A stretch of DNA of 64,000 bases from Haliotis cracherodii (taxonomy: Eukaryota). The position numbers and the translations under genes are program-made. The stretch spans positions 5,332,001 through 5,396,000 of the forward strand of contig NW_027266269.1 of assembly GCF_022045235.1 (NCBI RefSeq), written 5' to 3'. A model generated the notes under the pieces. That model searched no databases, was not told the origin of the DNA, and was given only the letters and a program-made list of their open reading frames with translations. Shown piece by piece: positions 14,246-62,269 of the stretch (its first letter is position 1; every line of letters begins with the position of its first letter).

Positions 14246-14819
14246 TTAGACCGACAACACTGATTGAAAGCAGTCAATCATTTCAGCCATCAGCTTAAAC
14301 TTGGTTTCATTCCCAAGATTCACAAAGTCCTGTTGCTCCTCAAGATAAATGTCAAACGCATAACCATCTGGGTTTCTAAATCTGAACGATTTCGCAATTT
14401 GTATTGCAGCATTCAGGAGTTTAGGCATGCTGTGCTTATCTGCCAGATATAAAGCGTGAAGAACCTCTCTTTTTAAAGTAGATTCGTCACGACAGAGTGT
14501 TAACAGAAACTCCTCACACTTCCGCTTCAAGCCATCCATCTGGTACTCGTCAGCCAGTTCCAGCAGTCTGTCCACCGTTACCTGGGTGACAGGCCTGAGT
14601 TCTGATGGGTAAATACAGAGAAGCAAGTCCACAATGTCATCATATGTTTTTCCCGGTAGAGGGACTTCACTTTGCCGCTTTTCTTTAAAGTCTCCATTAA
14701 ACATCCTGTGAAAAACATCCGATGCTGCTGAAAGTGCCCCTTTGATGACGTGAACACGTCTCCCTTCTACAACCAGAGCGACATCAGTCTTGTCAGAGGG
14801 TTCGTCAAACACAGATGAC
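14246..14819 (-). CDS. BTB/POZ protein type A, copy A1, exon 2 (202 aa with exon 1)
   Basis: TDVALVVEGRRVHVIKGALSAASDVFHRMF...LLELADEYQMDGLKRKCEEFL is a BTB fold followed by BACK-like helices; acceptor tggcag|G; intact to TAA. Confidence 0.92.
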
Positions 14820-15757: not shown

Positions 15758-15920
15758 GGGGCGGTCGGGAAGCCTAGTGGTTAAAGCATTGGCTCATCAC
15801 GCCGAAGGTCCGGGTTCGATTCCCGACATGGGTACAATGTGTGAAGCCCATTTCTGGTGTACCCCACCGTGATATTGCTGGAATATTGCTAAAAGCGGCG
15901 TAAAATCATACTCACTCACT
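15758..15920 (+). mobile_element. tRNA-derived SINE family 1 (~165 bp, ACTC tail); about 20 copies, e.g. 12153(-), 22463(-), 23190(-), 24654, 28271, 29622, 36740(-), 43824, 45818, 47733(-), 55032, 63120
   Basis: A box TAGCCTAGTGG, B box GGTTCGATTCC, then non-tRNA body and GCGGCGTAAAACCAA(ACTC)n tail. Confidence 0.9.
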
Positions 15921-16544
15921 ACAGTACAAAGTAGATTTAAGATGTAGATGTAGATGTAACCATGGTTACACTGGAGCGGATTATATTTGTCTTCTTTAGA
16001 TTTGAGTATTGATCATGACTACATTTATTTTTTTATATTATGTTATGCCGTGTAAACATGAATTATGATCTGTATGATCTGTGACTAAACACACTTATGA
16101 TAATGTAAATATGATTAAGGTACTACTTACATTGTGTATTTAAAGAAATCGTCATATAAAAATAAAAATTCATCATATGAAATACTTGTATTATGAAATT
16201 ATCATTTGCTTTGTAATGCCAAGAAACGTCTTTTTATTGGATTGTCGCTGGTCCTAGTCGGGGAAATCTTGGGTAAGGGAAGTAACTCTAGCCCCGGATA
16301 ATATGTTATATTGTTAACGTGGTTACCAGGATGGTAAGTTGCGAATGTCTGCGGTACCGGGAGTTAACAGAGGGGTGTCAGCCTGTCGGGGTATATCATT
16401 TCCATGCCAGTGGTTTATTTTATGTCAGTCTTGTCAAATATGCGGGAATTGAAGCAATAGCAAGCACACACATTACATTCTACGCAGATATTGTTTCGAG
16501 TTTCCCGATTTACAATTTCCAGTTTCAAATATACTGATTGTTAC

Positions 16545-16579
16545 CTTATTTCATCCTTGGCATGTTTAGGAGTAGCCAT
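16545..16579 (-). CDS. BTB A1 exon 1 (MATPKHAKDEI-R)
   Basis: ACAATGG Kozak context, 35 nt, AG|GTAAC donor, phase 2 joins G|TCA of exon 2 in frame. Confidence 0.75.
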
Positions 16580-16665
16580 TGTTACCAGGTAGTTACTGCA
16601 CCGTGATAATAATTGTCAGGTGACGAGGCCACAGCTAACACGGTAACTCGATGAACAAAACCCTT

Positions 16666-16719
16666 GTTTCACTCTCGATTTGACACTTCTGAGAAGTAGA
16701 CCTAAGGGAGGTAACTCGC
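16666..16719 (-). promoter_or_regulatory. Putative type A promoter module: IRF-like site, STAT/GAS site TTCTGAGAA, and GGGAGGTAACTCGC motif
   Basis: 87-140 bp upstream of the ATG; conserved at 30686 (GTTTCACTTTC) and 58159. Confidence 0.5.
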
Positions 16720-17225
16720 TTGGCTTTTCTTTCTTACAAATTGAGATTGAAATATCAATACTTAAGCTGTAATGGGTCGGATGGTTAGGGTCGTGTGGGT
16801 TCGAACCTGACGTCGTTAAAACGTGTCCTGATTTCTTTTGGCGTGTGACAGAATTTACTTGACAATTATATGTCTCCTGATTTATTTGGACTTTAGGTAT
16901 ACTGATTTATTTATTTGGTATTTGTGAGTGAGACAGAATTTACCTGGTACTTCCTCGTGTCCTGATGTATTTGGTATTTGGGTTGGTTTGTTGGCTGGTT
17001 TGTTGTTTAACGCCGCACTCGGCAATATTCCAGCTATATGACGGCGGTCTGTAATCCAGTGATTGACATCATGAGCATCGATCCACGTACTTGGGATTGA
17101 TGCCATGGATCAACCAAGTTCGCGAGCCTGACCACCCGATCCCGTTAATCGCCTCTTACGACAAGCGTAGTCGCCTTTTACGGCAAGCATGGGTTCCTGA
17201 AGACCTATTCTACCCCGGATCTACC

Positions 17226-17392
17226 CCGAGACAGAATTTACCAAACACTTCAAAGTTTCCTGATTTATTTGGTATTTGGGAGTGAGAGAGAATTTACCAT
17301 GCACTTCCAAGCTTCCTGATTTATTTGGTATTTGGGAGTGAGACAGAATTTACCCAACACTTCCACGCGTCCTGATTTATTTGGTATTTGGG
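17226..17392. repeat. ~55-bp tandem repeat (cctgatttatttggtatttgggagtgagacagaatttacc...); also 31240-31420 and 58722-58958
   Basis: Direct periodicity, 3-4 copies per block. Confidence 0.85.
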
Positions 17393-17527
17393 TTGGTTTG
17401 TTGTTTCGTTTGTTGTTTAACGCCGCACTCAGCAATATTCCAGCTATATGACGACGGTCTGTAAATAATCAAGCCCCGACCAGACAATCCAGTGATTACT
17501 GTCATGAGCATCGATCCACGCACTTGC

Positions 17528-17680
17528 CACAGTGCCAGTTGACCTCTCCCAGTGCGAGCTGACCAGTGCTTGATGACACACTAACCAGCTCTCACAGTGC
17601 CAGTTGACCTCTCCCAGTGCGAACTGACCAGTGCTTGATGACACACACTTATCGGCCCTAGCCACAGTACCAGTTGACTT
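17528..17680. repeat. 65-bp minisatellite, about 2 copies
   Basis: cacagtgccagttgacctctccc at 17528 and 17593. Confidence 0.85.
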
Positions 17681-18304
17681 AGTAACCTTATCACAGAACA
17701 ACTAACTGGCACTGAACGGAACCTCTTTGAAAAACGACTGAAGTCTCTGAAAGTTCTTCAGCACTCATCTGTTATTCATGAAGAGGACGTAAAACTATTG
17801 TCAAACACGTTTTCAAATAAAGGGAATATTTATTTTAGCAAAAGATCGCACACAAATCGTCTAAACAGTGTGAGGACATATCAGAAATGTTCAGAATTCT
17901 AAATCTACACTGCTTTTGTAATCTTACGTCGTCTATAAATACACACACTTTGTCAATAACGGCAACACAACACAGGTATGTTGATGGAAAACAAAAAGGT
18001 CACATGTCATTTGGGTATAACAAATCCCTGGAAAAAAGTCCATATAAGATGTACCAATTGTCACTCAAGATCAGATAGCAGGGGACCTATTCTCACTTCG
18101 GTTCATCTGACAGGAAACATTGGCACTGTGAATCCTCATAAATCAGAATCATATTATTTTTTATCTTCTCACACTTATCAAAAAAAAAAAGGTGGGCGTT
18201 GGAATAGTCCGAGGATGTATTGCCCACATGCCTACAGTGTAGGCCATTTCTGGTCCCCCGCCATGGGTCCGCTGAAAATCAACTCAATATCTCCTTTTCC
18301 TTTT

Positions 18305-18857
18305 TTACCTTATTTCAAGGTAATCTACTCGCTTACGAAGTAGCTTAGCAAGGCTTCTCGATGAAAGTTTCGTATAGTCTTCATGGTTCGCTATAATCTG
18401 ATTAATTGAAACTTTAGATAACGTGTCTATAACTATCTCTAACAAAGTTTCCAATTCATACTTATCGGCCAGGTATAAGAAGTGCACTATGTCGTTACAG
18501 TTTTGTACACCATAAAACTTATCAGTTTTACATAATGACAATATAAACTCCTCACACCTCCTCTTCAGGCCAACTATCTGGTATTCGTCAGCCAGTTCTA
18601 GCAGTTTGTCGACCGTTTCCATGGTGATAGGCCTGAGTTCCGATGGGTAAATACACAGCAGCATGTCCACAATGTCATCGCGAGATTTGCCTGGAAGTGG
18701 AATTTCAGCCTGCTGCTGTTCTTTAAAGTCGCCATTAAGCATGCGGTCAAAGACATCTGACGCCGTTGACAGAATCGCTTTATTGACGTAGAGACGTCTT
18801 CCCTCCACCACAATCGCAACATCAGATTTAGCTGTGGGTTTATCAAAGACTGATGGC
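18305..18857 (-). CDS. BTB/POZ protein type B, copy B1, exon 2 (193 aa with exon 1)
   Basis: Acceptor ttgcag|G, PSVFDKPTAKSDVAIVVEGRRLYVNKAILS..., intact ORF. Confidence 0.9.
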
Positions 18858-19104
18858 CTGCAACGAATACGAATCTATCAGATGACGTCATAACTGTCAC
18901 CCATTAATAATCGATAATGGACCAGGCAATCCAGTGATTAAGATCATAAGCATCGATCCACGCATCCCGTTAATCGCCTCTTACGACAAGCATTGGCTGC
19001 TGAAGACATAGTCTATCCAGGATCTTCACGGGTCTCACGCGGACCTATACACTGGAGTATGGGCTGTGGGTCCCTGTTCCCCATTACCCGTCTCAGGTAC
19101 TCAC

Positions 19105-19133
19105 CTTCTCTTCAGGAATACATGTGTGGCCAT
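19105..19133 (-). CDS. BTB B1 exon 1, proximal copy (MATHVFLKR-R)
   Basis: AAAATGG context, 29 nt, consensus donor AG|GTGAGT, phase 2. Confidence 0.8.
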
Positions 19134-19206
19134 TTTCAGCTTGCAGTAGAATTGGCTACCACACGGACAAGAAACGAGATCTTTATCGGAAAGCAAACCC
19201 GCTAGT

Positions 19207-19224
19207 GTTTTCAGTTTCGATTTC
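19207..19224 (-). promoter_or_regulatory. ISRE/IRF-like element AGTTTCGATTTC, 80 bp upstream of the type B ATG; also at 19641, 33985, 46604, 53393, 61199
   Basis: Matches ISRE consensus AGTTTCNNTTTC; identical in all six complete type B promoters. Confidence 0.55.
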
Positions 19225-19532
19225 AACAATAGACAAACAGTAATGGGCGGTAACTCGCATGTTAGGTTCTCAGTTTTCCATTCGACTAGTTTATTTATAG
19301 GATGTACTGTTGATTACACATGAACAGGCTTTGACGCACGACATTTACATGAACTGGGTCGAGGTTTAAGCTCAGTAACATTAGTCAGTGATGGTGAGTC
19401 AAACTCGCTGGCTTGGTTGATGCATGTTGAAGACCTAATTCTACCCCAGATCTTCACGGGTCACACGCGGACCTATACACTGGAGTATGGGCTGTGGGTC
19501 CCTGTTCCCCATACCCCGTCTCAGGTACTCAC

Positions 19533-19561
19533 CTTCTCTTCAGGAATACACGGTTGGCCAT
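19533..19561 (-). CDS. BTB B1 exon 1, duplicated distal copy (MANRVFLKR-R)
   Basis: ~430-bp tandem duplication of promoter plus exon 1; ATG and donor intact. Confidence 0.65.
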
Positions 19562-19871
19562 TTTCAACTTGCAGTAGAATTGGCTATCACACTGACAAGA
19601 AACGAGATCTTGATCGGAAAGCACACCTGCTTGTGTTTTTAGTTTCGATTTCAACAATAGACAAACAGTAATGGGAGGTAACTCGCATGCCAGGTTCTCA
19701 GGTTTCCATCTAACAACTAGTTTATGTATAGCATGTATTATTGGTTACACATGAACGCATAAAACGACTGTTGGTGTGTGAATGTGTCCACTTCGCGCTT
19801 AAGTCAAATGTTTGTTGGTTTGTTGCCTCGTCTGTCCGCGCCGACACTAACCGCAAAATCGTAGCGATGTA

Positions 19872-21350
19872 TACTGAGTCAAATTAAAAACTTCACATTT
19901 TTAAAAGTAATCCCATATATGATATAAAACGGACAAATGTATCAGAGAAGGTAATTTTTAATCATTAATGTCCAAAGAAGGATGTTAATTAACGGTGGTA
20001 ACCATAATTTGTTCCAAGCACCTACGGTATTCGGATATAACATCAACAGTTTAAATCATAAGTCCCAAGCACGAGAATCTGATGGCACACAAGTTCAATT
20101 GGGTGTATGGCCACAATGTGCGTTGACAACTGCCACACAACGCCTCCGCATGGACCTTGTGATGCTTGTGAACACATGATTGGGTAGACGACGCCATTGT
20201 TGCTGCAAAATGGTGCCAAGATCTTGCAAATTCTGTGATTGGTTCTCGAGAGTGCGCAGACTTCTGCCAAGAGCATCCCAGACGTGTTCGATAGGATTGA
20301 GGTCGGGAGACCTTGACGGCCAGTCCATGACGTTGACTCCCGCATTCTGAAGGAAATTTCTTGTCAAAATTGCTGTGTGGGGTCTGGCATTGTCGTGTTG
20401 GAAGATCAAACCGGGTCCATGTGCTGCCATAAAAGGCAGAAGTTCTGGTGCCAGCCTGGAACGTGCATTGCCACAGGAAGCACACCACACCATGACACTT
20501 CTGCCTCGAAATCTGTCAACTTCCTGTACACAACACTGGGCGTAACGTTCATGACGGCGCCTCCACACCCTCGCCCTACCATCAGCAAACCGAAGATTAA
20601 ATCGGGATTCATCACTGATGACGACTTGATTCCAATTCCTCTGAGTCCATCGTAAGTGTCGCTGTGCCCACAATTGACGTTGACGTCTGAGTAATTGAGT
20701 CAGAATCGGCCCGCAGTATGGCCGTCGTGCTTGAAGGTGAGCAGTTCTCAGGCGGTTTCTAACAGTTTGCGCACTCAGTTTACCCCTAAACAGTTCATTT
20801 CTGGTTGATGTAGCCGTCAAAAATCGGTTACGGAGGTGACGTAAGACAATCTGACGATCATCTGCATGTGACGTCACACGTGGTCGACCTGGCCGAGGGC
20901 GATCAACAGTGGTATCCGTTTGCTGTAGACGCGTCTGTAAATCATAAACAGTCCGTCGACTACAACCCATCGTCCCTGCGACTTCAGCTACGGACGTTCC
21001 CGTCTGCAACATGCCGATGGCACGTTCACGTTGCACATTTGAAAGGCGTGGCATGACAAATGGCCGTAAAGACTTTTGTTTTCTTGTGTTTTTCTTTTAT
21101 TGTTAATGACTGCTAACACGTATGGCTGAAAACACGTGCGGTATTATGGCCACGTGACCAGTTGCACGTGAAAAACCACTTTTGCCACTATAGTGCTGTG
21201 CACATGATTTTGATCACCTGCACTTAAAACGAGTGTTATCTGAAGACAATACGTGGCCATTACTGTTTAAATACACAATAAGGGCCCACAATGATAACTG
21301 GTCAAAATGTTAAAAGTTTAGGATAGTGAAGTTTTTAATTTGGTTCAGTA
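19872..21350 (-). mobile_element. Tc1/mariner DD34E transposon, copy 1
   Basis: TIR TACTGA(G/A)(T/C)CAAATTAAAAACTTCAC, TA TSD; empty TATATA sites near 46846, 53636, 61437. Confidence 0.95.
20095..21054 (-). CDS. Tc1 transposase (319 aa), open frame but apparently with an internal in-frame deletion
   Basis: Paired HTH, GRPR, SDESRF, FQHDNARPH-34-E (SPDLNPIE); the segment between VMVW and FQHD is shorter than is typical. Confidence 0.9.
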   Translation of the reverse strand: MPRLSNVQRERAIGMLQTGTSVAEVAGTMGCSRRTVYDLQTRLQQTDTTVDRPRPGRPRVTSHADDRQIVLRHLRNRFLTATSTRNELFRGKLSAQTVRNRLRTAHLQARRPYCGPILTQLLRRQRQLWAQRHLRWTQRNWNQVVISDESRFNLRFADGRARVWRRRHERYAQCCVQEVDRFRGRSVMVWCASCGNARSRLAPELLPFMAAHGPGLIFQHDNARPHTAILTRNFLQNAGVNVMDWPSRSPDLNPIEHVWDALGRSLRTLENQSQNLQDLGTILQQQWRRLPNHVFTSITRSMRRRCVAVVNAHCGHTPN

Positions 21351-23823
21351 TATATAACCCCACTGTCTATTATGTAGGATTGTAAAAGCGAGTATACCTG
21401 TGTGTTGTTTAACGCCGTACTAAAACCAGCGTAACCGACATGACGACTGATTGAGACTTGACCAGGTTAACCAGCAATTGACATTGGCATTGCATGAAAC
21501 CATTCACGCCTTCAGGGTATGATGGCACGCATAAAAGCTTTTGGTTGGTTGATTTTACGGCAAGCATGGGTTGCTGAAGACCTATTTTACCCCGGAATCG
21601 TGTGACCATCCAAAACGCCTCTCACACCTAGCAGAGGTTGTTTCGAAAACCCCACGGGGCTTAAATATTAAAATGGTCATACTAAATTATTGATTTATGT
21701 TTAAAATTCCTTCATAATGTTATTGTTATGAATACACATAACGTGTGTACTATCTGTTATGACTGTCCGTCCATGGAAGGAATAGACAGCATTGCGACTG
21801 TAAACCGTTTGTTTTGTTTCTTTGTTTGTTGTTTAACGCCGCACTCTGCACCCGGGCCCGTCAGTCGCCTCTTACGACAAGCATAGTCGCCTTTTACGGC
21901 AAGCATGGGTTGCTGGAGAGTGGAGACCTATTCTATCCCGGATCTTCACGGTACCACAGTTAACTGAATATGTGCGAAACATTCATTGTAGAAATTCTAT
22001 AAAACCGAAAACCACTCTCGTCTTGTTCGTTTTCTTTATTAAATTGTAAATAAAAGATAAGTTGAGTTGAATTGCTTACCAAATATACATTTCTTTCAAA
22101 AGGATATGTCAAAATAAAGAGGTGTAATATTGTTTCAACAGGAAAACAGGCAACAGGGTTGCTGTAACGCCTACATTAATAAGAGTGAGTGAGTATGGTT
22201 TTACGCCGCTTTTAGCAATATTCCAGCAATATCACGGCGGGGGGACACCAGAAATGGGCTTCACACACTGTACATTAATAAGAGTTTTGTTTGAAGTAGT
22301 TCCCGTTATTTATTGTTTAATGCCCCTCTCAGCAATATGACAGCTGCTTGTGAATAATCGAGTCTGGACCAGACAATCCAGTGATAGACAACATGAGCAT
22401 TGATATGTAGGACAGAAGTAGGCTGAATATAAAAAAAGCATTGGACTTTAAAACAGATACTAGTGAGTGAGTGAGTGAGTGAGTTTGGTTTTACGCCGCT
22501 TTTAGCAGTATTCCAGCAATATCACGGCGGGGGACACCAGAAATGGGCTTCACACATTGTACCCATGTCGGGATTCGAACCCGGATGTGCGGCGTGACGA
22601 GCGAACGTTTTAACCACTAGGCTACCCGACCGCCCCAAAACAGATACTAACATCTCATTTAGTAACATATGTTTTTTTATTGAACACTGCTGAAAGCAAT
22701 AATGTTTTGGTTATGCGTATATACTCTGATTACAGCCCAATTGGGGGAGACCCGTGAAGATTCCGGGGTAGAATAGGTCTTCAACAACCCATGCTTGCCG
22801 TGAAAGGTGACTATGCTTGTCGTAAAAGGCGACTAACGGGATCGGGTGGTCAGGCTCGCTGACTTGGTTGATGCATGTCATCGATCCCAATTGCGTGGAT
22901 TGATGCTCATGATATTAATCACTGGATTGTCTGGGCCAGACTCGATTATTTACAGACCGCCGTCATATAGCTGGAATATTGCTGAGTGCGGCGTTAAACA
23001 ACAAACAAATAAACAAAATAAGCAGACATCAACTAACTGTTCCCAGGAGGAAACCGAACTCTTTGGCCAGTTATAATTCAGCTTACGCGCAGAATTTCTC
23101 TGGAAGAAACTCCCGCTAGAAATCAAACTGGCACCATCCTTCGACCATTTCGAGAAACTGATTAAAACACCTTTTCCGAAAGTACTACGAGTGAGTGAGT
23201 GAGTGTGGTTTCACGCCGCTTTTACCAATATTCCAGCAATATCACGGCGGGGGACACCAGAAATGGGCTTCACACATTGTACCCATGTCGGGAATCGAAC
23301 CCAGGTTTCGGCGTGACGAGCGAACGCTTTAACCATTAGGCTACCCGACCGCCCCGAAAGTGCTACGAGGTTTTTGGCCAGTGAATGCTTCACGTCGTTT
23401 CTCCCATTATTATAATTACCATTTATCCCCCCACACTTTGCGTTCGTCTGTCTATCGTCGACCGCCTCCGTGGTCTGGTGGTAGAGCGTCCGCCCGGAGA
23501 GTTGAAGGTCCGGGGTTCGATCCCCGCCATACCAAAAGACGTTAAAAGATGGTACTTGTTGTTACCCTGTCTGGCGCTCGGCATAAAGGGGCTTAAACAA
23601 GGACTGGTCGGCTCGGAGTCAGTATACTGTGTCTGAGTGGGGTATTCATGTTAAACTGCGGCAAGGTATCTCAGTCTGCTAGCACTGTAAATCGGCATCA
23701 GTCCAGACTAGTACAAGCAGCAACACAAACACACACACGTACATGCACGTCGCTATATAAGTGCAATAATCCTGGACTCGACGTTAAACACAATTTCACA
23801 TCACCTCACCTCACCCATACAAG

Positions 23824-23859
<36 letters not shown>

Positions 23860-25367
23860 CCTCACCTGCACCTATATTCATGAGAAATCCCGGCCAGAAA
23901 CAGTTCCGACTGCATAATGGTGAGTGAGTGAGTGACTTAAAGTTTAACGTCACATCGACAATATTTCAGCCATATCGTGACGAAACAAAATTTGACATTT
24001 ACAATATATTTTAAACTGTATAAAATTCTGCCGACGAAGGGCAGTATAATAACTAGAATATCACAGATTTGCATAAAACTAGTTAGAGAGCATGTAAAAA
24101 TATACTATCATTTTGCAACACAATATAAAAACAGGCTATAGATCGCCAACAACTGAAGGTAGATCACCACGCTAGCATCCATGGGGACTTAACGTACTTT
24201 TGCTACCTGCATAGACCCCAGCAGGATTTACACCGTCCCTTCAGTGGTTGGCGATAATTGTCAATTTAACCGAATTAAAATAACATATATTCTGCGATTA
24301 AAAACGTGGTAGTAATAAACATACTGTGAATGACGTGGACTTACGTACCATCTCCGGGGGACAATCATTTTACATTACTTCAACCCTCTTCGAGGTACAG
24401 CCACTGACAATCTTAGTTATCCAATTTATTCTACCAATATTAAAAGATCATTTATTAACTACAAAATGAGCATGAATGTGTTTATGAATCACTATCAAAT
24501 TGTGATGATACCAGGTGTTCGCGAAAAGATGATCAAATTCCATCTCCTGTCGCTTGTCAATAATGTACATATAATAAATGATGTAATTTACATCCCTGTA
24601 CATAGTCATCGTCATCATCATCATCATCATCATGTTCATCATCATCGGAGTAAGGGTGGTCAGGTAGCCTAGTGGTTAAAGCGTTCGCTCGTCACGCCGA
24701 AGACCCGGGTTCGATTCCCGACATTGGTACAATTTGTTAAGCCCATTTCTGGTGTCCCCCGCCGTGATATTGCTGGAATATTGCTAAAAGCGGCGTAAAA
24801 CCAAACTCACTCACTCACTCATCGGAGTAAAAAAATCAGATTTTTAAAAATTGAATGAAATTTCACAGTTCTGCAACTACAGACTTTAAACTTTATTCAG
24901 AATAAGCAAAACAGATAAGAGTGGGAAGTTTTACCGGTATATCGGTAAATTGAGGTTCATTCTTTGCATGATACGTATCACAATATCAGATGATTTCAAA
25001 TAGCGATTTTTTATCATGTGTTTAATGGTATTAACTTGCCAAATACATGTATCTGCATTATGTTTCCGTAATTCCAAAATGCAAGTTCACATTCTGGAGT
25101 TTTTCTGTGGCATGATGTAGCACCAAGTCATCATTATCCCGGAGCGTTCATCCTTGCGTAATTATTGAATGTCCCAGCATCTTGTTTTGTTCCATTTATA
25201 AACTTCTATTCCTGATTGATGTTGCAAATTGCTTCCGAATTCACAATTTTGAATCATACAAAACATTGTGATACGTATCGCAATACGTCCTTGTGCATTG
25301 TAAAATATTGTGATACACTTGAAACATCCAAAACCCATCCCTAATGCAAATATAACAAAATCGATCA

Positions 25368-27400: not shown

Positions 27401-27435
27401 CTTTCATTTGCTACGGAGGAAGTATCGCTGGCCAT
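27401..27435 (-). CDS. BTB A2 exon 1, type A-prime (MASDTSSVANE-R)
   Basis: ACAATGG, 35 nt, AG|GTAC, phase 2; homolog at 42605-42639. Confidence 0.65.
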
Positions 27436-27639
27436 TGTCGACTGTTACTTGTTTAACGAAGAACGTACACCAGGAAATGGCTGTGGCCCAGGTCTGTCCT
27501 GTTTGTATTTTCGTTTTCAATGAAAAATGACCCACTGCAAGCTCCTCACAGCGATAGCCCGTTTGCGGAGCTCTCTATGTTACCGGGAGTGCAACGAAGG
27601 TGTCACGCGCTAGATAGGAGCTTGGACTCACTGGCGGTA

Positions 27640-27800
27640 AGGGAGCTAACTCACAAGCCTATTTCAGTGGATCACACTCCGGCGCTGTGGTGACTTAGCA
27701 TAACACCACTGGAACAGGCTAATTTGCATATCACGTGACCGGACTTATCTCTTGTTTGTAAACAAACGCGCCCTATTCAGAAATCAGACTAGAACGGACC
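27640..27800. repeat. Interspersed repeat also present inverted at 1-95, carrying adjacent E-box (CACGTG) and octamer (ATGCAAAT)
   Basis: Reverse complement of 27670-27760 aligns to 1-90. Confidence 0.7.
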
Positions 27801-30588: not shown

Positions 30589-31555
30589 TGTCACCAGGTA
30601 GTTACTGCACCGTGATTGTATGATGATAATAATTGTCAGGTGACGAGGCCACAGCGAACACGGTAACTCGATGAGCAAAACCCTTGTTTCACTTTCGATT
30701 TGACACTTCTGAGAAGTAGACCTAAGGGAGGTAACTCGCTTCGTTTTAAATTGAGATTGAAATATCAATACTTAAGCTGTAATGGGTCGGATGGTTAGGG
30801 TCGTGTGGGTTCGAACCTGACGTCGTTAAAACGTGTCCTGATTTGTTTTGGCGTGTGACAGAATTTACTTGACAATTATGTGTCTCCTGATTCATTTGGA
30901 CTTTAGGTATACTGATTTATTTATTTGGTATTTGTGAGTGAGACAGAATTTACCTGGTACTTCCTCGTGTCCTGATGTATTTGGTATTTGGGTTGGTTTG
31001 TTGGCTGGTTTGTTGTTTAACGCCGCACTCAGCAATATTCCAGCTATATGACGGCGGTCTGTAATCCAGTGATTGACATCATGAGCATCCATCCACGTAC
31101 TTTGGATTGATGCCATGCATCAACCAAGTTCGCGAGCCTGACCACCCGACCCCGTTAGTCGCCTCTTACGACAAGCGTAGTCGCCTTTTACGGCAAGTAT
31201 GGGTTGCTGAAGACCTATTCTACCCCGAATTTTCGAGGGCCTGGTATTTGGGAGTGAGACAGAATTTACCTGGCACTTCCACGTATCCTGATTTATTTGG
31301 TATTTGGGAGTGAGACAGAATTTACCAAGCACTTCCAATTTTACTGATTTATTTGGTATTTGGGAGTGAGACAGAATTTATCAAGCACTTCCACATGTCC
31401 TGATTTATTTGGTATTTGGGTTTGTTTGTTGGTTCGCTTGTTGTTTAACGCCGCACTCAGCAATATTCCAGCTATATCACGGCGGTCTGTTAACAATCAA
31501 GCCTGGACCAGACAATCCAGTGATTAATGTCATGAGCATCGATCAACGCACTTGC

Positions 31556-33876: not shown

Positions 33877-33905
33877 CTTCTCTTCAGGAATACACGGTTG
33901 GCCAT
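33877..33905 (-). CDS. BTB B2 exon 1 (MANRVFLKR-R)
   Basis: 29 nt, AG|GTGAGT. Confidence 0.8.
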
Positions 33906-34229
33906 TTTCAGCTTGCAGTAGAATTGGCTATCACACTGACAAAAAACGAGATCTTGATCGGAAAGCACACCCGCTTGTGTTTTTAGTTTCGATTTCAACA
34001 ATAGACAAACAGTAAAGGGCGGTAACTCGCATGCCAGGTTCTCACGTTTCCATCAAACAACTAGTTTATTTATAGCATGTATTACTGGTTACACATGAAC
34101 GCATAAAACGACTGTTGGTGTGAGAATGTGGCCACTTCGCGCTTAAGTCAAATGTTTGTTGGTTTGTTGCCATAGGAGGTATTCCTCGTCTGTCCGCGCC
34201 GACACTAAGCGCGAAATCGTAGCGATGTA

Positions 34230-42604: not shown

Positions 42605-42639
42605 CTTTTTATTGCAGCGGAGATAATTACGAGGGCCAT
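42605..42639 (-). CDS. BTB A3 exon 1, type A-prime (MALVIISAAIK-R)
   Basis: ACAATGG, 35 nt, AG|GTAC, phase 2. Confidence 0.65.
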
Positions 42640-42785
42640 TGTCGACTGTTGCTTGTTAAACGAAGAACGTACACCAGGAAATGGCTGTGCCCCAGGTCTG
42701 TCCTGTTTGTATTTTCGTTTTTAACGAATGCTGACTCACTGCAAGCTCCTCACAGCGATACCCGTTCGCGGAGCTCTCCATCCGA

Positions 42786-46524: not shown

Positions 46525-49500
46525 TTTCAGCTTGCAGTAGAATTGGCTATCACACGGACAAGAAACGAGATCTTTATCGGAAAGCACACCCGCTAGTGTT
46601 TTTAGTTTCGATTTCAACAATAGACAAACAGTAATGGGCGTTAACTCGCATGCCAGGTTCTCGCGTTTCCAGTCAACAACTCGTTTATTTATAGGATGCA
46701 CTATTGATTACACATGAACGCATAAAACGACTATTGGTGTCTGAATGTTGCCACTTCGCGCTTAAGTGAAATGTTTGCTGGTCTGTTGCCATAGGAGGTA
46801 TTCCTCGTCTGTCCGCGTCGATTCAACCGCGAAATCGTGGCGATGTATATACCGCCACTGTCTATTACGTATTATTGTAAAGGCGAGTATATTTGAGTGT
46901 TGAGTGTGACATGACTGCTTGTACATAATTGAGACTTGACCAGGTAAACAAGCAATTGACATTTCAAGAAACGATTCCCGCCTTCAGGGTACGATGGCAC
47001 GCATAAAAGGTTGTTTTGTTGTTTAACGCCGCACTCAGCATGCTTAAATATTAAAATGGTCATACTAAATTATTGATTTATGTTTAAAATTCCTTCATAA
47101 TGTTATTGTGATGAATACACATAACGTGTGTACTATCTGTTATGACTGTCCGTCCAAGGAAGGAATAGACAGCATTGCCACTGTAAACCGTTTGTTTTGT
47201 TTGTTTGTTTGTTTGTTGTTTAACGCCACACTCAGCAATATTCAGCGAGCCTGACCACCCAATCCCGTCAGTCGCCTCTTACGACAAGCATAGTCGCCTT
47301 TTACAGCAAGCATGGGTTGCTGGAGAGTGGAGACCTATTCTATCCCGGATCTTCATGGTACCACAGTTAACTGAATATGTGCGAAACATTCATTGTAGAA
47401 ATTCTATAAAACCGAAAACCACCCTCGTCTTGTCCGTTTTCTTGATTAAATTGTTAATAAAAGATAAGTTGAGTTGAATTGCTTACCAAATATACATTTC
47501 TTTCAAAAGGATATGTCAAAATAAAGAGGTGCAATATTGTTTCAACAGGAAAACAGGCAACAGGGTTTTCTGTCATGTTTGTTGTTTAATGCCCCTCTCG
47601 GCAATATGACGGCTGTTTGTGAATAATCGAGTCTGGATCAGACAATCCAGTGATAGACAACATGAGCATTGATATGTGGGACACAAGTAGGCTGAATATA
47701 AAAATAAAGCATTGGACTTTAAAACAGATACTAGTGAGTGAGTGAGTGAGTGAGTTTGGTTTTACGCCGCTTTTAGCAATATTCCAGGAATATCACGGCG
47801 GGGGACACCAAAAATGGGCTTCACACATTGTACCCATGTCGGGATTCGAACCCGGATCTTCGACGTGACGAGCGAACGCTTTAACCACTAGGTTACCCGA
47901 CCGCCCCAAAACAGATACTAACATCTCATTTAGTAACATATGTTTTTTTATTGAACACTGCTGAAAGCAATAATGTTTTGGTTATGCGTATATACTCTGA
48001 TTACAGCCCAATTGGGGGAGACCCGTGAAGATTCCGGGGTAGAATAGGTCTTCAACAACCCATGCTTGCCGTAAAAGGTGACTATGCTTGTCGTAAAAGG
48101 CGACTAACGGGATCGGGTGGTCAGGCTCGCTGACTTGGTTGATGCATGTCATCAATCCCAATTGCGTTGATTGATGCTCATGATATTAATCACTGGATTG
48201 TCTGGGCCAGACTCGATTATTTACAGACTGCCGTCATATAGCTGGAATTTTGCTGAGTGCGGCGTTAAACAACAAACAAATAAACAAAATAAGCAGACAT
48301 CAACTAACTGTTCCCAGGAGGAAACCGAACTCTTTGGCCAGTTATAATTCAGCTTACGCACAGAACTTCTCTGGAAGAAACTCCCGCTAGAAATCAAACT
48401 GGCACCATCCTTGGACCATTTCGAGAAACTGATTAAAACACCTTTTCCAAAAGTACTACGAGTGAGTGAGTGATTATGGTTTCACGCCGCTTTTACCAAT
48501 ATTCCAGCAATATCACGGCGGGGGACACCAGAAATTGGCTTCACACATTGTACCCATGTCGGGAATCGTACCCCGGGTTTTCGGCGTGACGAGCTAACGC
48601 TTTAACCATTAGGCTACCCGACCGCCCCGAAAGTGCTACGAGCTTTTTGGCCAGTGAATGCTTCACGTCGTTTCTCCCATTACTATAATTACCATTTATC
48701 CCCCCCACACTTTGCGTTCGTCTGTCTATCGTCGACCGCCTCCGTGGTCTGGTGGTAGAGCGTCCGCCCGGAGAGCGGAAGGTCCGGGGTTCGATCCCCG
48801 CCATACCAAAAGACGTTAAAGGATGGTACTTGTTGTTACCCTGTCTGGCGCTCGGCATAAAGGGGCTTAAACAAGGACTGGTCGGCTCAGAGTCAGTATA
48901 CTGTGTCTGAGTGGGGTATTCATGTTAAACTGCGAAAAAGGTATCTCAGTCTGCTAGCACTGTAAATCGGCATCAGTCCAGACTAGTACAAGCAGCCACA
49001 CAAACACACACACGTACATGCACGTCGCTATATAAGTGCAATAATCTTGGACGCAAAGTTAAACCCAATTTCACCTCACCGCACCTGCACCTATCATAAT
49101 AAAAGCGTCAAAATTCTTTCCATATTCATGAGAAATTACTGCCAGAAACAGTCGATTGTACGTTCCGACTGTATAATGATGAGTGAGTGAATTAAAGTTT
49201 AACGTCATATCGGCAATATTTCAGCCATATCGTGACGAAACAAAATTTGACATTTACAATATATTTTAAAATGTATAAAATTCTGCCGACGAAGGGCAGT
49301 ATAATAACTAGAATATCACAGATTTACATAAAACTAGTTAGAGAGCATGTTAAAATATACTATCATTTTGCAACACAATATAAAAACAGGCTATAGATCG
49401 CCAACAACTGAAGGTAGATCACCACGCTAGGATCCATGGGGACTTACAGTACTTTTGCTACCTACATGGACCCCAGCAGGATTTACACCATCCCTTCAGT

Positions 49501-53313: not shown

Positions 53314-55771
53314 TTTCAGCTTGCAGTAGAATTGGCTACCACACTGACAAGAAACGAGATCTTGATCGGAAAGCACACCCGCTAGTGTTTTCAGTTTCGA
53401 TTTCAACAATAGACAAACAGTAATGGGCGTTAACTCGCATGTCAGGTTCTCGCGTTTCCATTCAACAACTAGTTTATTTATAGGATGCACTATTGATTAC
53501 ACATGAACGCATAAAACGACTATTGGTGTCTGAATGTTGCTACTTCGCGCTTAAGTGAAATGTTTGCTGGTCTGTTGCCATAGGAGGTATTCCTCGTCTG
53601 TCCGCGTCGATTCAACCGCGAAATCGTGGCGATGTATATACCGCCACTGTCTATTACGTATTATTGTAAAGGCGAGTATATTTGAGTGTTGAGTGTGACA
53701 TGACTGCTTGTACATAATTGAGACTTGACCAGGTAAACAAGCAATTGACATTTCAAGAAACGATTCCCGCCTTCAGGGTACGATGGCACGCATAAAAGGT
53801 TGTTTTGTTGTTTAACGCCGCACTCAGCATGCTTAAATATTAAAATGGTCATACTAAATTATTGATTTATGTTTAAAATTCCTTCATAATGTTATTGTGA
53901 TGAATACACATAACGTGTGTACTATCTGTTATGACTGTCCGTCCAAGGAAGGAATAGACAGCATTGCCACTGTAAACCGTTTGTTTTGTTTGTTTGTTGT
54001 TTAACGCCACACTCAGCAATATTCAGCGAGCCTGACCACCCAATCCCGTCAGTCGCCTCTTACGACAAGCATAGTCGCCTTTTACAGCAAGCATGGGTTG
54101 CTGGAGAGTGGAGACCTATTCTATCCCGGATCTTCATGGTACCACAGTTAACTGAATATGTGCGAAACATTCATTGTAGAAATTCTATAAAACCGAAAAC
54201 CACCCTCGTCTTGTCCGTTTTCTTTATTAAATTGTTAATAGAAGATAAGCTGAGTTGAATTGCTTACCAAATATACATTTCTTTCAAAAGGATATGTCAA
54301 AATAAAGAGGTGCAATATTGTTTCAACAGGAAAACAGGCAACAGGGTTGCTGTATCGCCTACATTAATAAGAGTGAGTGAGTATGGTTTTACGCCGCTTT
54401 TAGCAATGTTCCAGCAATATCACGGCGGGGGGACACCAGAAATGGGCTTCACACACTGTACATTAATAAGAGTTTTCTGTCATGTTTGAAGTAGTTCCCG
54501 TTGTTTGTTGTTTAATGCCCCTCTCAGTAATATGACAGCTGTTTGTGAATAATCGAGTCTGGACCAGACAATCCAGTGATAGACAACATGAGCATTGATA
54601 TGTAGGACAGAAGTAGGATGAATATAAAAATAAAGCATTGGGCTTTAAAACAGATACTAGTGAGTGAGTTTGGTTTTACGCCGCTTTTAGCAGTATTCCA
54701 GCAATATCACGGCGGGGGACACCAGAAATGGGTTACCCGACCGCCCCAAAACAGATACTAACATCTCATTTAGTAACATATGGTTTTTTTTATTGAACAC
54801 TGCTGAAAGCAATAATGTTTTGGTTATGCGTATATACTCTGATTACAGCCCAATCGGGGGAGACCCGTGAAGATTCAGGGGTAGAATAGGTCTTCAACAA
54901 CCTATGCTTGTCGTAAAAGGTGACTATGCTTGTCGTAAAAGGCGACTAACAGGATCCGGTTGTCAGGCTCGCTGACTTGGTTGATGCATGTCATCAATCC
55001 CAATCATCTCGTATTTCCTACAGTACAAAGTGGGGCGGTCGGGTAGCCTAGTGGTTAAAGCATTGGCTCATCACGCCGAAGATCCGGGTTCGATTCCCGA
55101 CATGGGTACAATGTGTGAAGCCCATTTCTGGTGTCCCCGGCCGTGATATTGCTGGAATATTGCTAAAAGCGGTGTAAAATCAAACTCACTCACTACAGTG
55201 CAAAGTAAGGAGAAGGTATATGGATGAACAACTTTTTTATTGCAATCAGGAACGACGTTTCGGTGTAGGTTCTAACACTGTCATCAAACTAGTACAGAGT
55301 ATGGCTGACAAGTATTTATACAGGTAGGAGGCGGTGTTTATACAGTAGAGTAGATTTAAGATGTAGATGTAGATGTAACCATGGTTACACTGGAGCGGAT
55401 TATATTTGTCTTCTTCTTTAGATTTGAGTTTTGATCATGACTACATTTATTTTTTTATATTATGTTATGCCGTGTAAACATGAATTATGATCTGTATGAT
55501 CTGTGACTAAACACACTTATGATAATGTAAATATGATTAATGTACTACTTACATTGTGTATTTAAAGAAATCGTCATATAAAAATCAAAATCCATTATAT
55601 GAAATACTTGTATTATGAAATTATCATTTGCTTTGTAATGCAAAGAAACGTCATTTCATTTGATTGTCGCTGGTCGTAAGGGAAGTAACTCTAGCCCCGG
55701 ATAATATGTTATATTGTTTACGTGGTTACCAGGATGGTAAGTTGCAAATGTCTGCGGTACCGGTAAGTTAA

Positions 55772-58061: not shown

Positions 58062-59088
58062 TGTCACCAGGTAGTTACTGCACCGTGATTGTATGATGAT
58101 AATAATTGTCAGGTGACGAGGCCACAGCTAACACGGTAACTTGATGAGCAAAACCCTTGTTTCACTCTCGATTTGACACTTCTGAGAAGTAGACCTAAGG
58201 GAGGTAACTCGCTTGGTTCTTCTTTCTTACAAATTGAGATTGAAATATCAATACTTAAGCTGTAATGGGTCGGATGGTTAGGGTCGTGTGGGTTCGAACC
58301 TGACGTCGTTAAAACGTGTCCTGATTTCTTTTTCCGTGTGACAGAATTTACTTGACAATTATGTGTCCCCTGATTTATTTGGACTTTAGGTATACTGATT
58401 TATTTATTTGGTATTTGTGAGTGAGACAGAATTTACCTGGTACTTCCTCGTGTCCTGATGTATTTGGTATTTGGGTTGGTTTGTTGGCTGGTTTGTTGTT
58501 TAACGCCGCACTCGGCAATATTCCAGCTATATGACGGCGGTCTTTAATCCAGTGATTGACATCATGAGCATCAATCCACGTACTTGGGATAATGCCATGC
58601 ATCAACCAAGTTTGCGAGCCCGACCACCCGATCCCGTTAATCGCCTCTTACGACAAGCGTAGTCGCCTTTTACGGCAAGTATGGGTTGCTGAAGAACTAT
58701 TCTACCCCGAATTTTCACGGGCCTGGTATTTGGGAGTGAGACAGAATTTACCTGGCACTTCCACGAGTCCTGGTTTATTTGGAATTTGGGAGTGAGACAG
58801 AATTTATCTGGCACTTCCAAGTTTCCTGGTTTATTTGGTATTTGGGAGTGAGACAGAATTTACCTGGCACTTCTACGAGTCCTGGTTTATTTGGAATTTG
58901 GGAGTGAGACAGAATTTTCACAACACTTCCACGTGTCCTGAATTATTTGGAATTTGGGTTGGTTAGTTGGTTCGCTTGTTGTTTAACGCCGCACTCAGCA
59001 ATATTCCAGCTATATGACGGCGGTCATAATCAAGCCTGGACCAGACAATCCAGTGATTAATGTCACGAGGATCGATTCACGCACTTGC

Positions 59089-61119: not shown

Positions 61120-62269
61120 TTTCAGCTTGCAGTAGAATTGGCTACCACACGGACAAGAAACGAGATCTTGATCGGAAAGCACACCCGCTTGTGTTTTTAG
61201 TTTCGATTTCAACAATAGACAAACAGTAATGGGCGGTAACTCGCATGCCAGGTTCTCGCGTTTCAATTCAACAACTCGTTTATTTATAGGATGCACTATT
61301 GATTACAAATGAACGCAGAATGTGAATAATGTGAATGTGGCCATTTCGCGCTTAAGTAAAATGTTTGTTGTTTTGTTGCCATAGGAGGTATTCCTCGCCT
61401 GTCCGCGCCCACACTAACCGCGAAATCGTAGCGATGTATATACCGCCACTGTCTATTACGTATTATTGTAAAAGCGAGTATATTTGTGTGTTGTTTAACG
61501 CCGTACTAAAATCAACGTCACCGACATGACGACTGCTCGTACATAATTGAGACTTGACCAGGTAAACCAGCAATTGACATTGCATGAAACCATTCACGCC
61601 TTCAGGGTACGATGGCACGCATAAAAGCTTTTGGTTGTTTAACGCCGCACTCAGCAATATTCCAGCTATATGACGGCGGTCTGTAAATAATCGAGTCTGG
61701 AACAGACAATCTAGTGATTGATATCAAGAGTATCGATCTAAGCAATTGGGATCGATGACATGCATCAACCAAGTCAGCGAGCCTGACCACCCGATCCCGT
61801 TCGTCGCCTTTTACGACAAGCATAGTCACCTTTTACGGCAAGCATGGGTTGCTGAAGACCTATTCTACCCTGAGAATCTTCACCGGTCATGTTGACAAGT
61901 GTGACCCCCACGGGGCTTAAATATTAAAATGGTCATACTAAATTGTTGGTTTATGTTTAAAAGTAATCTATACATCTCTTGACATGGTAGATATGAATTT
62001 CCTTTATAATGTTATTGTGATGAAAACACATAACATGTAACGTGTGTACTATCTGTATTGACTGTCCGTCCAGGGAAGGAATAGACAGCATTGCCACTGT
62101 AAACCGTTTGTTTTGTTTGTTTGTTTGTTTGCTGTTTAACGCCGCACTCTACAATATTCAGCGAGCCTGACCACCCGATCCCGTTAGTCGCCTCTAACGT
62201 CAAGCATAGTCACCTTTTACGATATGCATTGGTTGCTGAAGAGCTATTCGACCCCGGGTCTTCACGGGT

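What the first reader, a model, noticed from the sequence alone, without database searches (positions are those of the whole stretch)
16666..19652. ISRE/IRF motifs sit 70-100 bp upstream of the ATG in all three different first-exon types
Type B has AGTTTCGATTTC (exact ISRE pattern) 80 bp upstream in six copies with no substitution, while nearby bases vary. Type A has GTTTCACT(T/C)TC at 16666, 30686 and 58159, followed by TTCTGAGAA (GAS/STAT pattern). Type A-prime has ATTTTCGTTTT(C/T) at 27507 and 42711. Types A and B also share GGG(A/C)GGTAACTCGC further upstream. Positional conservation among otherwise dissimilar promoters argues against chance, though the motifs are short and the copies within a type are not independent.
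Basis: partly seen in the sequence, partly recalled or inferred. Interest (0 to 1): 0.75.

Follow-up and report, generated by a model that had tools for sequence, protein, structure and literature searches.

The report
IRF-like motifs before abalone BTB genes
Three diverged promoter and first-exon versions of a tandem abalone BTB gene cluster all keep an interferon-regulatory-factor-type DNA motif 72-108 bases before the start codon, so these genes are plausible but untested virus-inducible genes.

Summary
Every motif sits at the stated coordinates. The genes are on the minus strand: a tandem cluster of two-exon BTB-only genes in an abalone genome, with splicing confirmed by RNA contigs.

On the gene strand the motifs form arrays of GAAANN hexamers:
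- Type B: GAAATC-GAAACT-RAAARC
- Type A: CAAATC-GARAGT-GAAACA
- Type A': RAAAAC-GAAAAT-ACAAAC

They start 91, 97/108 and 83 nt before the ATG.

The comparison between types is significant. The IRF-like block and the GCGAGTTACC.CCC block are the best local alignments between otherwise unalignable promoters (0-7 of 1000 shuffles reach the score).

The genome has IRF and STAT genes. Its viperin gene and one IRF gene carry ISRE-like sites upstream.

Three corrections:
- RNA contigs run into the motif, so the start of transcription lies within or upstream of it.
- The shared upstream block is part of a dispersed repeat (165 genome copies).
- Binding and induction are untested.

Other notes of this scan report ISRE-like motifs at four other gene families of this genome.

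Verdict: a candidate IRF element, a new member of a known kind.

The parts
19207..19224 (-). Type B hexamer array GAAATCGAAACTGAAAAC, containing the ISRE-like 12-mer at 19213-19224. Proximal promoter of the BTB gene whose exon 2 is at 18305-18856.
19635..19652 (-). Type B hexamer array of the distal duplicate promoter. An RNA contig from its exon 1 reaches 19646, inside the motif.
33979..33996 (-). Type B hexamer array (ATG at 33905).
46598..46615 (-). Type B hexamer array (ATG at 46524).
53387..53404 (-). Type B hexamer array (ATG at 53313).
61193..61210 (-). Type B hexamer array (ATG at 61119).
16665..16682 (-). Type A hexamer array CAAATCGAGAGTGAAACA (ATG at 16579). An RNA contig reaches 16673, inside the motif.
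30685..30702 (-). Type A hexamer array CAAATCGAAAGTGAAACA (ATG at 30588). This copy has the exact GAAANNGAAA core.
58158..58175 (-). Type A hexamer array CAAATCGAGAGTGAAACA (ATG at 58061).
16687..16695 (.). GAS-like palindrome-type site TTCTCAGAA, 10 nt upstream of the type A IRF-like motif GARAGTGAAAC. Also at 30707-30715 and 58180-58188.
27501..27518 (-). Type A' hexamer array GAAAACGAAAATACAAAC (ATG at 27435). TTCATTGAA overlaps its start at 27516-27524.
42705..42722 (-). Type A' hexamer array AAAAACGAAAATACAAAC (ATG at 42639).
16704..16719 (-). Shared block GCGAGTTACCTCCCTT (type A). The equivalent blocks are at 19243-19258, 19671-19686, 30724-30739, 34015-34030, 46634-46649, 53423-53438, 58197-58212 and 61229-61244. 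A diverged copy GTGAGTTAGCTCCCTT lies at 27639-27654 in A'. Its core is a dispersed genomic 16-mer.
19105..19133 (-). Type B first exon, coding part (MATHVFLKR + 2 nt, donor AG|GTGAGT). Other copies: 19533-19561, 33877-33905, 46496-46524, 53285-53313 and 61091-61119. A partial copy without the motif is at 52826-52854.
   Evidence: protein models
16545..16579 (-). Type A first exon, coding part (MATPKHAKDEI + 2 nt). Other copies: 30554-30588 and 58027-58061.
27401..27435 (-). Type A' first exon, coding part. The other copy is at 42605-42639.
   Evidence: (P0004, P0007)
18305..18856 (-). BTB exon 2 (second coding-exon type). The acceptor at 18856 is confirmed by an RNA contig. Sister exons hold the ORFs 33062-33583 and 60222-60749.
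14246..14817 (-). BTB exon 2 (first coding-exon type). The acceptor at about 14817 is confirmed by RNA contigs. Sister exons hold the ORFs 40572-41162, 44583-45176 and 50484-51083. The copy at 25368-25805 holds only a truncated open frame.
19292..19299 (-). TATAAATA, 75-78 nt upstream of the type B array (166-169 nt before the ATG). Other copies: 19723-19730 (TATACATA), 34067-34074, 46686-46693, 53475-53482 and 61281-61288. A possible TATA box if transcription starts upstream of the motif.
27537..27624 (-). 88-nt high-copy repeat module that ends about 20 nt upstream of the A' motif.

Best explanation
The motifs are IRF-binding elements of the ISRE / IRF-E type, built as two to three GAAANN hexamers. 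They lie in the region around the transcription start, or in the 5' leader, of a tandemly amplified family of small BTB-only genes that look like Cul3 adaptors, in an abalone.

Shown: the element travels with the short first exon as a promoter-plus-first-exon cassette in three diverged versions (A, A', B). These cassettes stand in front of different BTB coding exons.

Inferred: after virus or nucleic-acid sensing, an abalone IRF binds the shared AANNGAAA core and raises transcription of the cluster. In type A and some A' cassettes a STAT may also bind the adjacent TTCNNNGAA site.
For: 1. Sequence. Type B reads GAAATCGAAACT in 12 of 13 cluster copies. Type A reads GAAAGTGAAAC (4 of 8), GAGAGTGAAAC (3 of 8) or AAAAGTGAAAC (1 of 8). 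Type A' reads GAAAACGAAAAT (3 of 5) or AAAAACGAAAAT (2 of 5). All are on the gene strand and start 83 to 108 nt before the ATG.

2. Rarity. Exact GAAANNGAAA occurs 15 times in 457,444 background strand-positions (3.3e-5). 26 of the 31 exact matches in the 154-kb cluster lie in the first-exon flanks (-300 to +50 of each ATG).

3. Footprint between types. In 220 nt upstream of the ATG, the best local alignment of B against A' is the motif block itself: 18 of 21 identical, at -93..-73 against -85..-65, reached by 2-3 of 1000 dinucleotide shuffles. A gapped A-B alignment runs from the 16-mer block through the hexamer array (7 of 1000).

4. A GAS-like TTCNNNGAA site adjoins the array in type A (8 of 8) and A' (3 of 5). 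The background chance of one within 16 positions is 0.009.

5. Trans-factors. At least 2 IRF-domain genes and 1 STAT gene are in the genome. Oyster IRF2 and IRF8 activate human ISRE reporters (PMC5557890, passages). Shrimp IRF binds a functional ISRE in the 5' UTR of Vago4 (PMC4602278, passages).

6. Test chosen in advance on three immune genes of the same genome. Viperin has TTCCAGGAA, 9 nt, then GAAACTGAAA (antisense) 584 nt before its ATG. One of two IRF genes has GAAATAGAAACT 773 nt before its ATG. That is 2 of 3 loci, against about 0.07 expected per locus and 0 of 6 BTB paralogs outside the cluster.

7. The genes are real and expressed. Spliced contigs join exon 1 to exon 2 in runs X1, X2 and X5.
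Against: - No binding, induction or start-site data exist. All runs were assembled contigs, which give neither expression levels nor true 5' ends.
- The contigs reach into the motif (to 19646 in type B and 16673 in type A). The element is therefore at least partly transcribed, unlike classical ISREs upstream of the start site (recalled).
- Within each type the motif is no better conserved than its surroundings.
- One type B copy carries GAAATCTAAACT. Half of the type A copies (4 of 8) and 2 of 5 A' copies miss the exact core.
- The three types probably share ancestry, so they are not three independent inventions.
- The motif class was chosen after the fact from many known motifs.
- No paper links this gene family to immunity.
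Confidence: 0.5

Rival explanations
1. The shared block is under constraint but is not an IRF site. It could be a core-promoter or initiator-region element, a site for another factor that reads GAAA-rich DNA (for example a PRDM1/Blimp-like protein, a suggestion from memory), or an RNA element of the 5' leader that acts on stability or translation.
For: - RNA contigs end inside the motif in both type A and type B, within 3 nt of each other in the aligned hexamer register. This fits a start site at the motif or a transcribed motif.
- The invariant part across the three types is only AAA-N-CGAAA-N-T.
- Type B has no GAS-like partner.
Against: - The match to the IRF core is full length: 12 of 12 for the ISRE pattern in type B, with a third hexamer.
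- GAS-like sites adjoin it in two types.
- The same composite occurs far upstream of viperin, where it cannot be an initiator or leader element.
Confidence: 0.25
2. There is no function. The blocks are relics of common ancestry, or of short gene-conversion tracts between paralogous promoters, possibly left from an exapted SINE fragment. Their likeness to ISRE and GAS is fortuitous.
For: - The copies within a type are young, and the motif is not better conserved than its flanks.
- The neighbouring shared block is a dispersed 16-mer with 165 genome copies, 6 of 12 sampled in tRNA-like SINEs.
- One copy of the A' repeat module elsewhere (L030) is followed by TTAAAAACGAAAAT.
- Variants that break the core exist in all three types.
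Against: - Outside the two blocks the promoter types do not align at all, yet the 21-nt block keeps 18 identities at the same distance from the ATG.
- The promoters themselves are not repeats: all 15 type B hits and all 8 type A hits are in the cluster.
- The combination of 16-mer and IRF core gives 13 matches genome-wide, 10 of them in the cluster.
- Only 1 of about 27 repeat-module copies outside the cluster carries a similar tail.
Confidence: 0.2

Closest known systems
Vertebrate ISRE / IRF-E (PRDI-like) elements of interferon-stimulated genes
   Same: Direct repeats of GAAANN. Type B matches GAAANNGAAACT in full. The element is in sense orientation close to the gene's 5' end, and a GAS-like TTCNNNGAA site adjoins it in type A and A'.
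   Different: - No interferon is known in abalone.
- The element is at or downstream of the transcription start, not upstream of it as I recall for classical ISG promoters.
- Binding and induction are untested.
Shrimp Vago4 ISRE, bound and activated by Litopenaeus vannamei IRF (PMC4602278, passages read)
   Same: An invertebrate gene with an ISRE-like site in the 5' untranslated region. This is a precedent for an IRF site that works from the leader.
   Different: - Vago4 is a secreted cytokine-like gene with a single site.
- Here the target is a tandem family of BTB genes with three cassette versions.
- No EMSA or reporter data exist here.
IRF and STAT motifs found among known transcription-factor sites when the poly(I:C)-induced genes of Nematostella were searched (PMC8476169, passages read; the motif lists are in supplements that I did not see)
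   Same: Vertebrate-type IRF and STAT motifs upstream of antiviral genes in a non-vertebrate.
   Different: - That study starts from measured induction.
- Here induction is unknown and the evidence is sequence only.
TE-borne interferon-inducible enhancers
   Same: Repeat-derived sequence sits in all three promoters: the dispersed 16-mer, and an 88-nt high-copy module in A'.
   Different: - The IRF-like array itself is not part of the repeats.
- The type A and B promoters have no copies outside the cluster.
- The combination of 16-mer and IRF core is nearly confined to the cluster.
SPOP / BATH-type BTB Cul3 adaptors (the sources name the proteins 'BTB and MATH domain-containing protein 36/38-like')
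   Same: A BTB domain with the start of a SPOP-type BACK domain (Pfam). The nearest solved relatives are the BTB domains of KLHL22, SPOP and KBTBD4.
   Different: - No MATH domain was found in the exon-2 ORFs.
- The proteins are only about 170-230 aa long.

Membership tests
ISRE / IRF-binding element | Sequence: direct GAAANN repeats (core GAAANNGAAA; full ISRE GAAANNGAAACT, consensus recalled) | tested here: met
   Type B: 12 of 13 copies match the full 12-mer. Exact core: A 4 of 8, A' 3 of 5. All remaining copies have one mismatch.
ISRE / IRF-binding element | Occurrence beyond chance and conserved position | tested here: met
   Background rate 3.3e-5 per position. The best B-A' local alignment is the motif block, at -93..-73 against -85..-65, reached by 2-3 of 1000 shuffles. 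Within-type conservation is not significant.
ISRE / IRF-binding element | Location in the regulatory region next to the transcription start | tested here: inconclusive
   The element lies 72-108 nt before the ATG. Spliced contigs reach 19646 and 16673, inside the motifs, so the start is within or upstream of the element. No raw reads or CAGE data were available.
ISRE / IRF-binding element | Bound by an IRF protein | not testable with these tools
   IRF-domain genes exist at C12:81.326 Mb and C2:52.91 Mb.
ISRE / IRF-binding element | Gene induced by virus, dsRNA or an interferon-like signal through the element | not testable with these tools
   Only assembled contigs of runs without a library record were on offer. 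No paper on this family was found.
GAS (STAT-binding) element | TTCNNNGAA next to the IRF site, with a STAT gene in the genome | tested here: inconclusive
   Present in type A 8 of 8, A' 3 of 5 and B 0 of 13. Background is 62 in 229 kb. A STAT_bind domain gene is on C8. The motif is short and binding is untested.
TE-borne interferon-response enhancer | The IRF/STAT motif is part of a dispersed repeat consensus | tested here: not met
   All 15 type B and all 8 type A promoter hits are in the cluster. The A' repeat module ends about 20 nt before the motif, and only 1 of about 27 copies outside the cluster has a similar tail. 10 of 13 matches of the 16-mer plus core pattern are in the cluster.
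MATH-BTB (BATH / SPOP) Cul3 adaptors | BTB domain | tested here: met
   Pfam BTB with E-values from 7.8e-21 to 3.5e-24 in 3 of 3 exon-2 ORFs tested. Nearest PDB relatives: KLHL22, SPOP, KBTBD4.
MATH-BTB (BATH / SPOP) Cul3 adaptors | MATH substrate-binding domain | tested here: not met
   No MATH match in the 3 exon-2 ORFs. The database models are 166-231 aa and carry BTB only. Exon 1 adds only 10-12 residues.

The most novel reading that the evidence does not exclude
The cluster is a lineage-specific antiviral effector family: small BTB-only Cul3 adaptors or decoys with fast-changing C-terminal parts. It is wired to the ancestral IRF/STAT pathway by a portable cassette (IRF array, 5' leader and 10-12-codon first exon). 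That cassette has been duplicated and placed in front of different coding exons: 28 first exons stand before 17 BTB exons. Together with viperin, an IRF gene and the other families noted by this scan, it would outline a vertebrate-style ISRE regulon in a mollusc that has no known interferon.
Probability: 0.27. Interest if true: 0.65.

Novelty: new member of a known kind. Interest (0 to 1): 0.45.

Why it matters
Molluscs have IRFs, STATs and many interferon-stimulated-gene homologues but no recognised interferon. Few native cis-elements that connect sensing to effector genes have been described for them.

A conserved IRF-type array in the leaders of a large, abalone-specific BTB cluster gives a concrete set of sites to test by EMSA, reporters and challenge RNA-seq. 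It also nominates a new candidate effector family, which matters for abalone herpesvirus disease in aquaculture.

If the element works from the transcribed leader, as in shrimp Vago4, that would also say something about how invertebrate IRF targets are built.

Tried and rejected
This is the main gap.
- Within-type invariance as evidence. Rejected, because 17% (B, window), 22% (B, cluster), 68-74% (A) and 60% (A') of same-size windows vary no more than the motif window. The last sub-run of that script (A', window copies) crashed on a regex and gave no number.
- ISRE carried by a transposon. Rejected.
- The 88-nt module upstream of A' is not the SINE-like element that another note places at 22750-22845.
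- Rfam found only 9 tRNA-like matches, which I take to be heads of tRNA-derived SINEs, and nothing at the motifs.
- BTB paralogs outside the cluster: 0 of 6 have an exact GAAANNGAAA in about 1.2 kb upstream. Their true first exons may lie further away.
- Start-site mapping. Contigs give only a lower bound. A TATA-directed start about 50 nt upstream of the type B array and a start at the array itself both remain possible.
- An idea that the first hexamer descends from a SINE B box was not tested statistically and is left as a note.
- Literature searches found no paper on native ISREs in abalone or on this BTB family. The searches were: ISRE + mollusc + IRF + promoter; the BTB-and-MATH name + abalone (0 papers); abalone + IRF + ISRE (3 papers, none on abalone promoters); OsHV-1 + BTB; abalone + herpesvirus + transcriptome + BTB; oyster + IRF + motif enrichment. 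Lists of differentially expressed genes usually sit in supplements, which were closed and not consulted, so the family could be listed there unseen.
- I never joined exon 1 and exon 2 translations for a search. Exon-2 ORFs were searched alone, and database proteins were used as returned.
Full report
WHAT IS THERE

The window is part of an abalone (Haliotis) genome, at G000:C6:5332001-5396000. The contig length of 40,864,218 equals that listed for the contig carrying Haliotis cracherodii proteins.

All long BTB open reading frames lie on the minus strand. Pfam finds BTB in 3 of 3 ORFs tested, with E-values from 7.8e-21 to 3.5e-24, and no MATH domain. The nearest solved relatives are the BTB domains of KLHL22, SPOP and KBTBD4.

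Each gene has two coding exons:
- A first exon of 29 or 35 coding bases that ends AG|GT in phase 2.
- A BTB exon that begins after a CAG acceptor.

Database protein models from the same species have exactly these N-termini: MATHVFLKRR, MANRVFLKRR, MATRVSPKRR, MATPKH..., MALVIISAAIKR and MASDTSS....

Spliced contigs confirm the joints:
- Run X2, record 11 joins 14694-14817 to 16543-16673 (type A first exon).
- Run X5, record 21 joins 18569-18856 to 19532-19646 (the distal type B first exon, skipping the proximal one).
- Run X1, record 3 carries 49 nt beyond the same type A joint. I infer this from the depth bin and table 3 of that call.

The runs have no library record, but the removed introns show that they hold RNA. 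No retrocopy exists in this genome, because all first-exon hits lie in the cluster.

THE OBSERVATION

Every motif is at the stated place. On the gene strand the motifs read as arrays of GAAANN hexamers:
- Type B: GAAATC GAAACT RAAARC
- Type A: CAAATC GARAGT GAAACA
- Type A': RAAAAC GAAAAT ACAAAC

The arrays start at these distances before the A of the ATG:
- Type B: 91 nt (13 of 13 copies)
- Type A: 108 nt (7 of 8) or 97 nt (1 of 8)
- Type A': 83 nt (5 of 5)

I extended the view to the whole cluster, C6:5.346-5.468 Mb (window plus nine adjacent stretches). It holds 13 full and 2 partial type B first exons, 8 type A and 5 type A'. These stand before 17 BTB exons.

Across the cluster:
- GAAATCGAAACT is exact in 12 of 13 type B copies. 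One copy has GAAATCTAAACT.
- Type A reads GAAAGTGAAAC in 4, GAGAGTGAAAC in 3 and AAAAGTGAAAC in 1 of 8 copies.
- Type A' reads GAAAACGAAAAT in 3 and AAAAACGAAAAT in 2 of 5 copies.
- The two partial type B exons (52854 in the window and a twin outside it) lose homology about 58 nt before the ATG and lack the array.

IS IT MORE THAN CHANCE?

Within a type the answer is no. The copies are 86-100% identical. The motif window is no better conserved than its surroundings:
- Type B window copies: 0 of 12 columns vary, but 17% of 12-column windows in the same alignment do as well.
- Type B, all 13 copies: 22% of windows do as well.
- Type A: 68% (cluster) and 74% (window copies).
- Type A': 60%.

Between types the answer is yes. 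Exact GAAANNGAAA occurs 15 times in 457,444 background strand-positions, and 26 of the 31 exact matches in the 154-kb cluster lie in the first-exon flanks (-300 to +50 of each ATG).

Local alignment of the 220 nt before the ATG, with no motif given, returned these as the best-scoring blocks:
- B against A': TTGAAATCGAAACTAAAAACA and TTGAAAACGAAAATACAAACA. 18 of 21 bases are identical, at -93..-73 and -85..-65, and 2-3 of 1000 dinucleotide shuffles reach the score.
- A against B: GCGAGTTACC.CCCTT (0 of 1000).
- A against A': GAGTTA.CTCCCTTA (5 of 1000).
- A gapped A-B alignment that runs from that block through the array (7 of 1000).

The part invariant in all three types is AAA-N-CGAAA-N-T, which contains the minimal IRF half-site context AANNGAAA (a consensus I recall).

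CORRECTIONS TO THE READING

(a) Transcription start. The spliced contigs run from exon 1 up to 19646 (type B motif at 19641-19652) and 16673 (type A motif at 16666-16676). The start therefore lies within or upstream of the motif. The element is at the start site or in the 5' leader, not at a classical upstream position.

A conserved TATAAATA lies 75-78 nt upstream of the type B array. It would predict a start about 50 nt upstream of the array. Contigs cannot decide between the two options. Shrimp Vago4 is a precedent for a functional ISRE in a 5' UTR (PMC4602278, passages read).

(b) The shared upstream block is not private to these promoters. Its core GAGTTACCTCCCTTAG has 165 exact copies in the genome, against 0 for the reversed control. 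6 of 12 sampled copies lie in tRNA-like SINEs with a B box downstream.

The IRF-like array is not repeat-borne:
- All 15 type B and all 8 type A promoter hits are in the cluster.
- The pattern of 16-mer, 14-32 nt, then GAAANNGAAA gives 13 matches genome-wide, 10 of them in the cluster.
- In A', an 88-nt high-copy module (1615 first-look candidates) ends about 20 nt before the motif. Only 1 of about 27 copies elsewhere has a similar tail.

(c) GAS-like sites. TTCTCAGAA lies 10 nt upstream of the IRF-like motif in 8 of 8 type A copies. TTCATTGAA overlaps the start of the array in 3 of 5 A' copies. Type B has none in 13 copies. The background is 62 in 229 kb, so the chance of one within 16 positions of a given site is about 0.009.

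CONTEXT IN THE SAME GENOME

The genome encodes at least two IRF-domain genes and one STAT.

As a test chosen in advance, I looked upstream of three immune genes:
- Viperin (C13) carries TTCCAGGAA, 9 nt, then GAAACTGAAA in antisense, 584 nt before its ATG.
- The IRF gene on C12 carries GAAATAGAAACT 773 nt before its ATG. That exon follows an acceptor-like TTTCAG, so the site may be intronic.
- The IRF gene on C2 has none.

That is 2 of 3 loci, against about 0.07 expected per locus and 0 of 6 BTB paralogs outside the cluster.

Other notes of this scan report ISRE-like motifs at PHYHIP-C, TRIM, macro-E3 and IFI44L genes of this genome. I did not check them and count them only as leads.

Oyster IRF2 and IRF8 activate human ISRE and IFN-beta reporters (PMC5557890, passages read). 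IRF and STAT motifs were among the known sites found when the poly(I:C)-induced genes of Nematostella were searched (PMC8476169, passages read; the lists are in supplements that I did not see).

MECHANISM

Shown:
- The gene models and their splicing.
- The motif strings, positions and strand.
- The sharing of the block between promoter types.
- The presence of IRF and STAT genes.

Inferred:
- An abalone IRF binds the array, and a STAT binds the adjacent site in type A and some A' cassettes.
- This induces the cluster after virus or nucleic-acid sensing.

I give this reading 0.5. The rivals are a constrained element with another function at the start site or in the leader (0.25), and a neutral relic (0.2).

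COMPARISON AND NOVELTY

The element works like a vertebrate ISRE / IRF-E, and like the shrimp Vago4 leader ISRE. Membership in the class of functional IRF elements is met on sequence and non-random occurrence, inconclusive on position relative to the start site, and untestable here for binding and induction.

The proteins are BTB-only relatives of SPOP/BATH-type adaptors and fail the MATH criterion.

I found no paper on native ISREs in abalone or on this gene family. Supplements were closed.

I class this as a new member of a known kind, with moderate interest (0.45).

Noticed in passing
G000:C13:13967764-13967773 (locus L081): The viperin gene has a composite site 584 nt before its ATG: TTCCAGGAA (a perfect STAT-type palindrome), 9 nt, then GAAACTGAAA in antisense. 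A TATAAA-like box lies 58 nt before the ATG.
   Followed up: partly
G000:C12:81327791-81327802 (locus L083): GAATAGAAACT preceded by G, that is GAAATAGAAACT, a full match to the ISRE pattern. It lies 773 nt before the ATG-bearing exon of an IRF gene and may be in an intron. The second IRF gene (C2, L082) has no exact core in about 1.3 kb.
   Followed up: partly
window 16704-16719 and genome-wide: The 16-mer GAGTTACCTCCCTTAG has 165 exact copies in the genome (0 for the reversed control). 6 of 12 sampled copies are tRNA-like SINEs with a B box 12-31 nt downstream. In types A and B the hexamer array sits at a similar distance, and GTTGAAATC / GTCAAATC faintly resembles a B box. This was not tested statistically.
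   Followed up: partly
window 16642-16650 and 16710-16718; 30662-30670 and 30730-30738: In type A the GAS-like site and the IRF-like array are flanked by a 9-nt direct repeat GGTAACTCG (plus strand). This looks like a small duplication or a target-site duplication.
   Followed up: no
window 27537-27624: An 88-nt module with inverted ends (CAAGCTCC...GGAGCTTG) has more than 1600 first-look candidates genome-wide. It ends sharply at GAGGAGCTTG and is followed by unrelated sequence. It is not the same as the SINE-like element noted at 22750-22845.
   Followed up: partly
window 52826-52854 (twin outside the window at C6:5449264-5449292): Partial type B first exons keep the last 58 nt or so of the leader and the coding part, but lack the hexamer array and everything upstream. 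They are natural promoter-deletion controls.
   Followed up: partly
window 19090-19760: The type B cassette is duplicated in tandem, 428 bp apart. The RNA contig of run X5 uses the distal first exon and skips the proximal one. The source's protein model P0010 uses the proximal one.
   Followed up: partly
window 20095-21054 (minus); 34401-35405: A Tc1/mariner-type transposase ORF of 319 aa (DDE_3 plus HTH domains) that looks intact. A second copy is split over several shorter open reading frames.
   Followed up: no
C6:5346000-5468000: The cluster is a higher-order duplication. For example, the window segment around 19090-19330 recurs 85 kb away at 99% identity. There are 28 first exons for 17 BTB exons, so many genes have alternative promoter and first-exon cassettes.
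   Followed up: partly
window 15763-15834, 24664-24722, 29636-29691, 37518-37589, 42398-42469, 45823-45894, 48746-48808, 55037-55108, 63125-63196: Nine weak Rfam tRNA matches (29-36 bits). I take them to be heads of tRNA-derived SINEs in the introns and spacers of the cluster.
   Followed up: no
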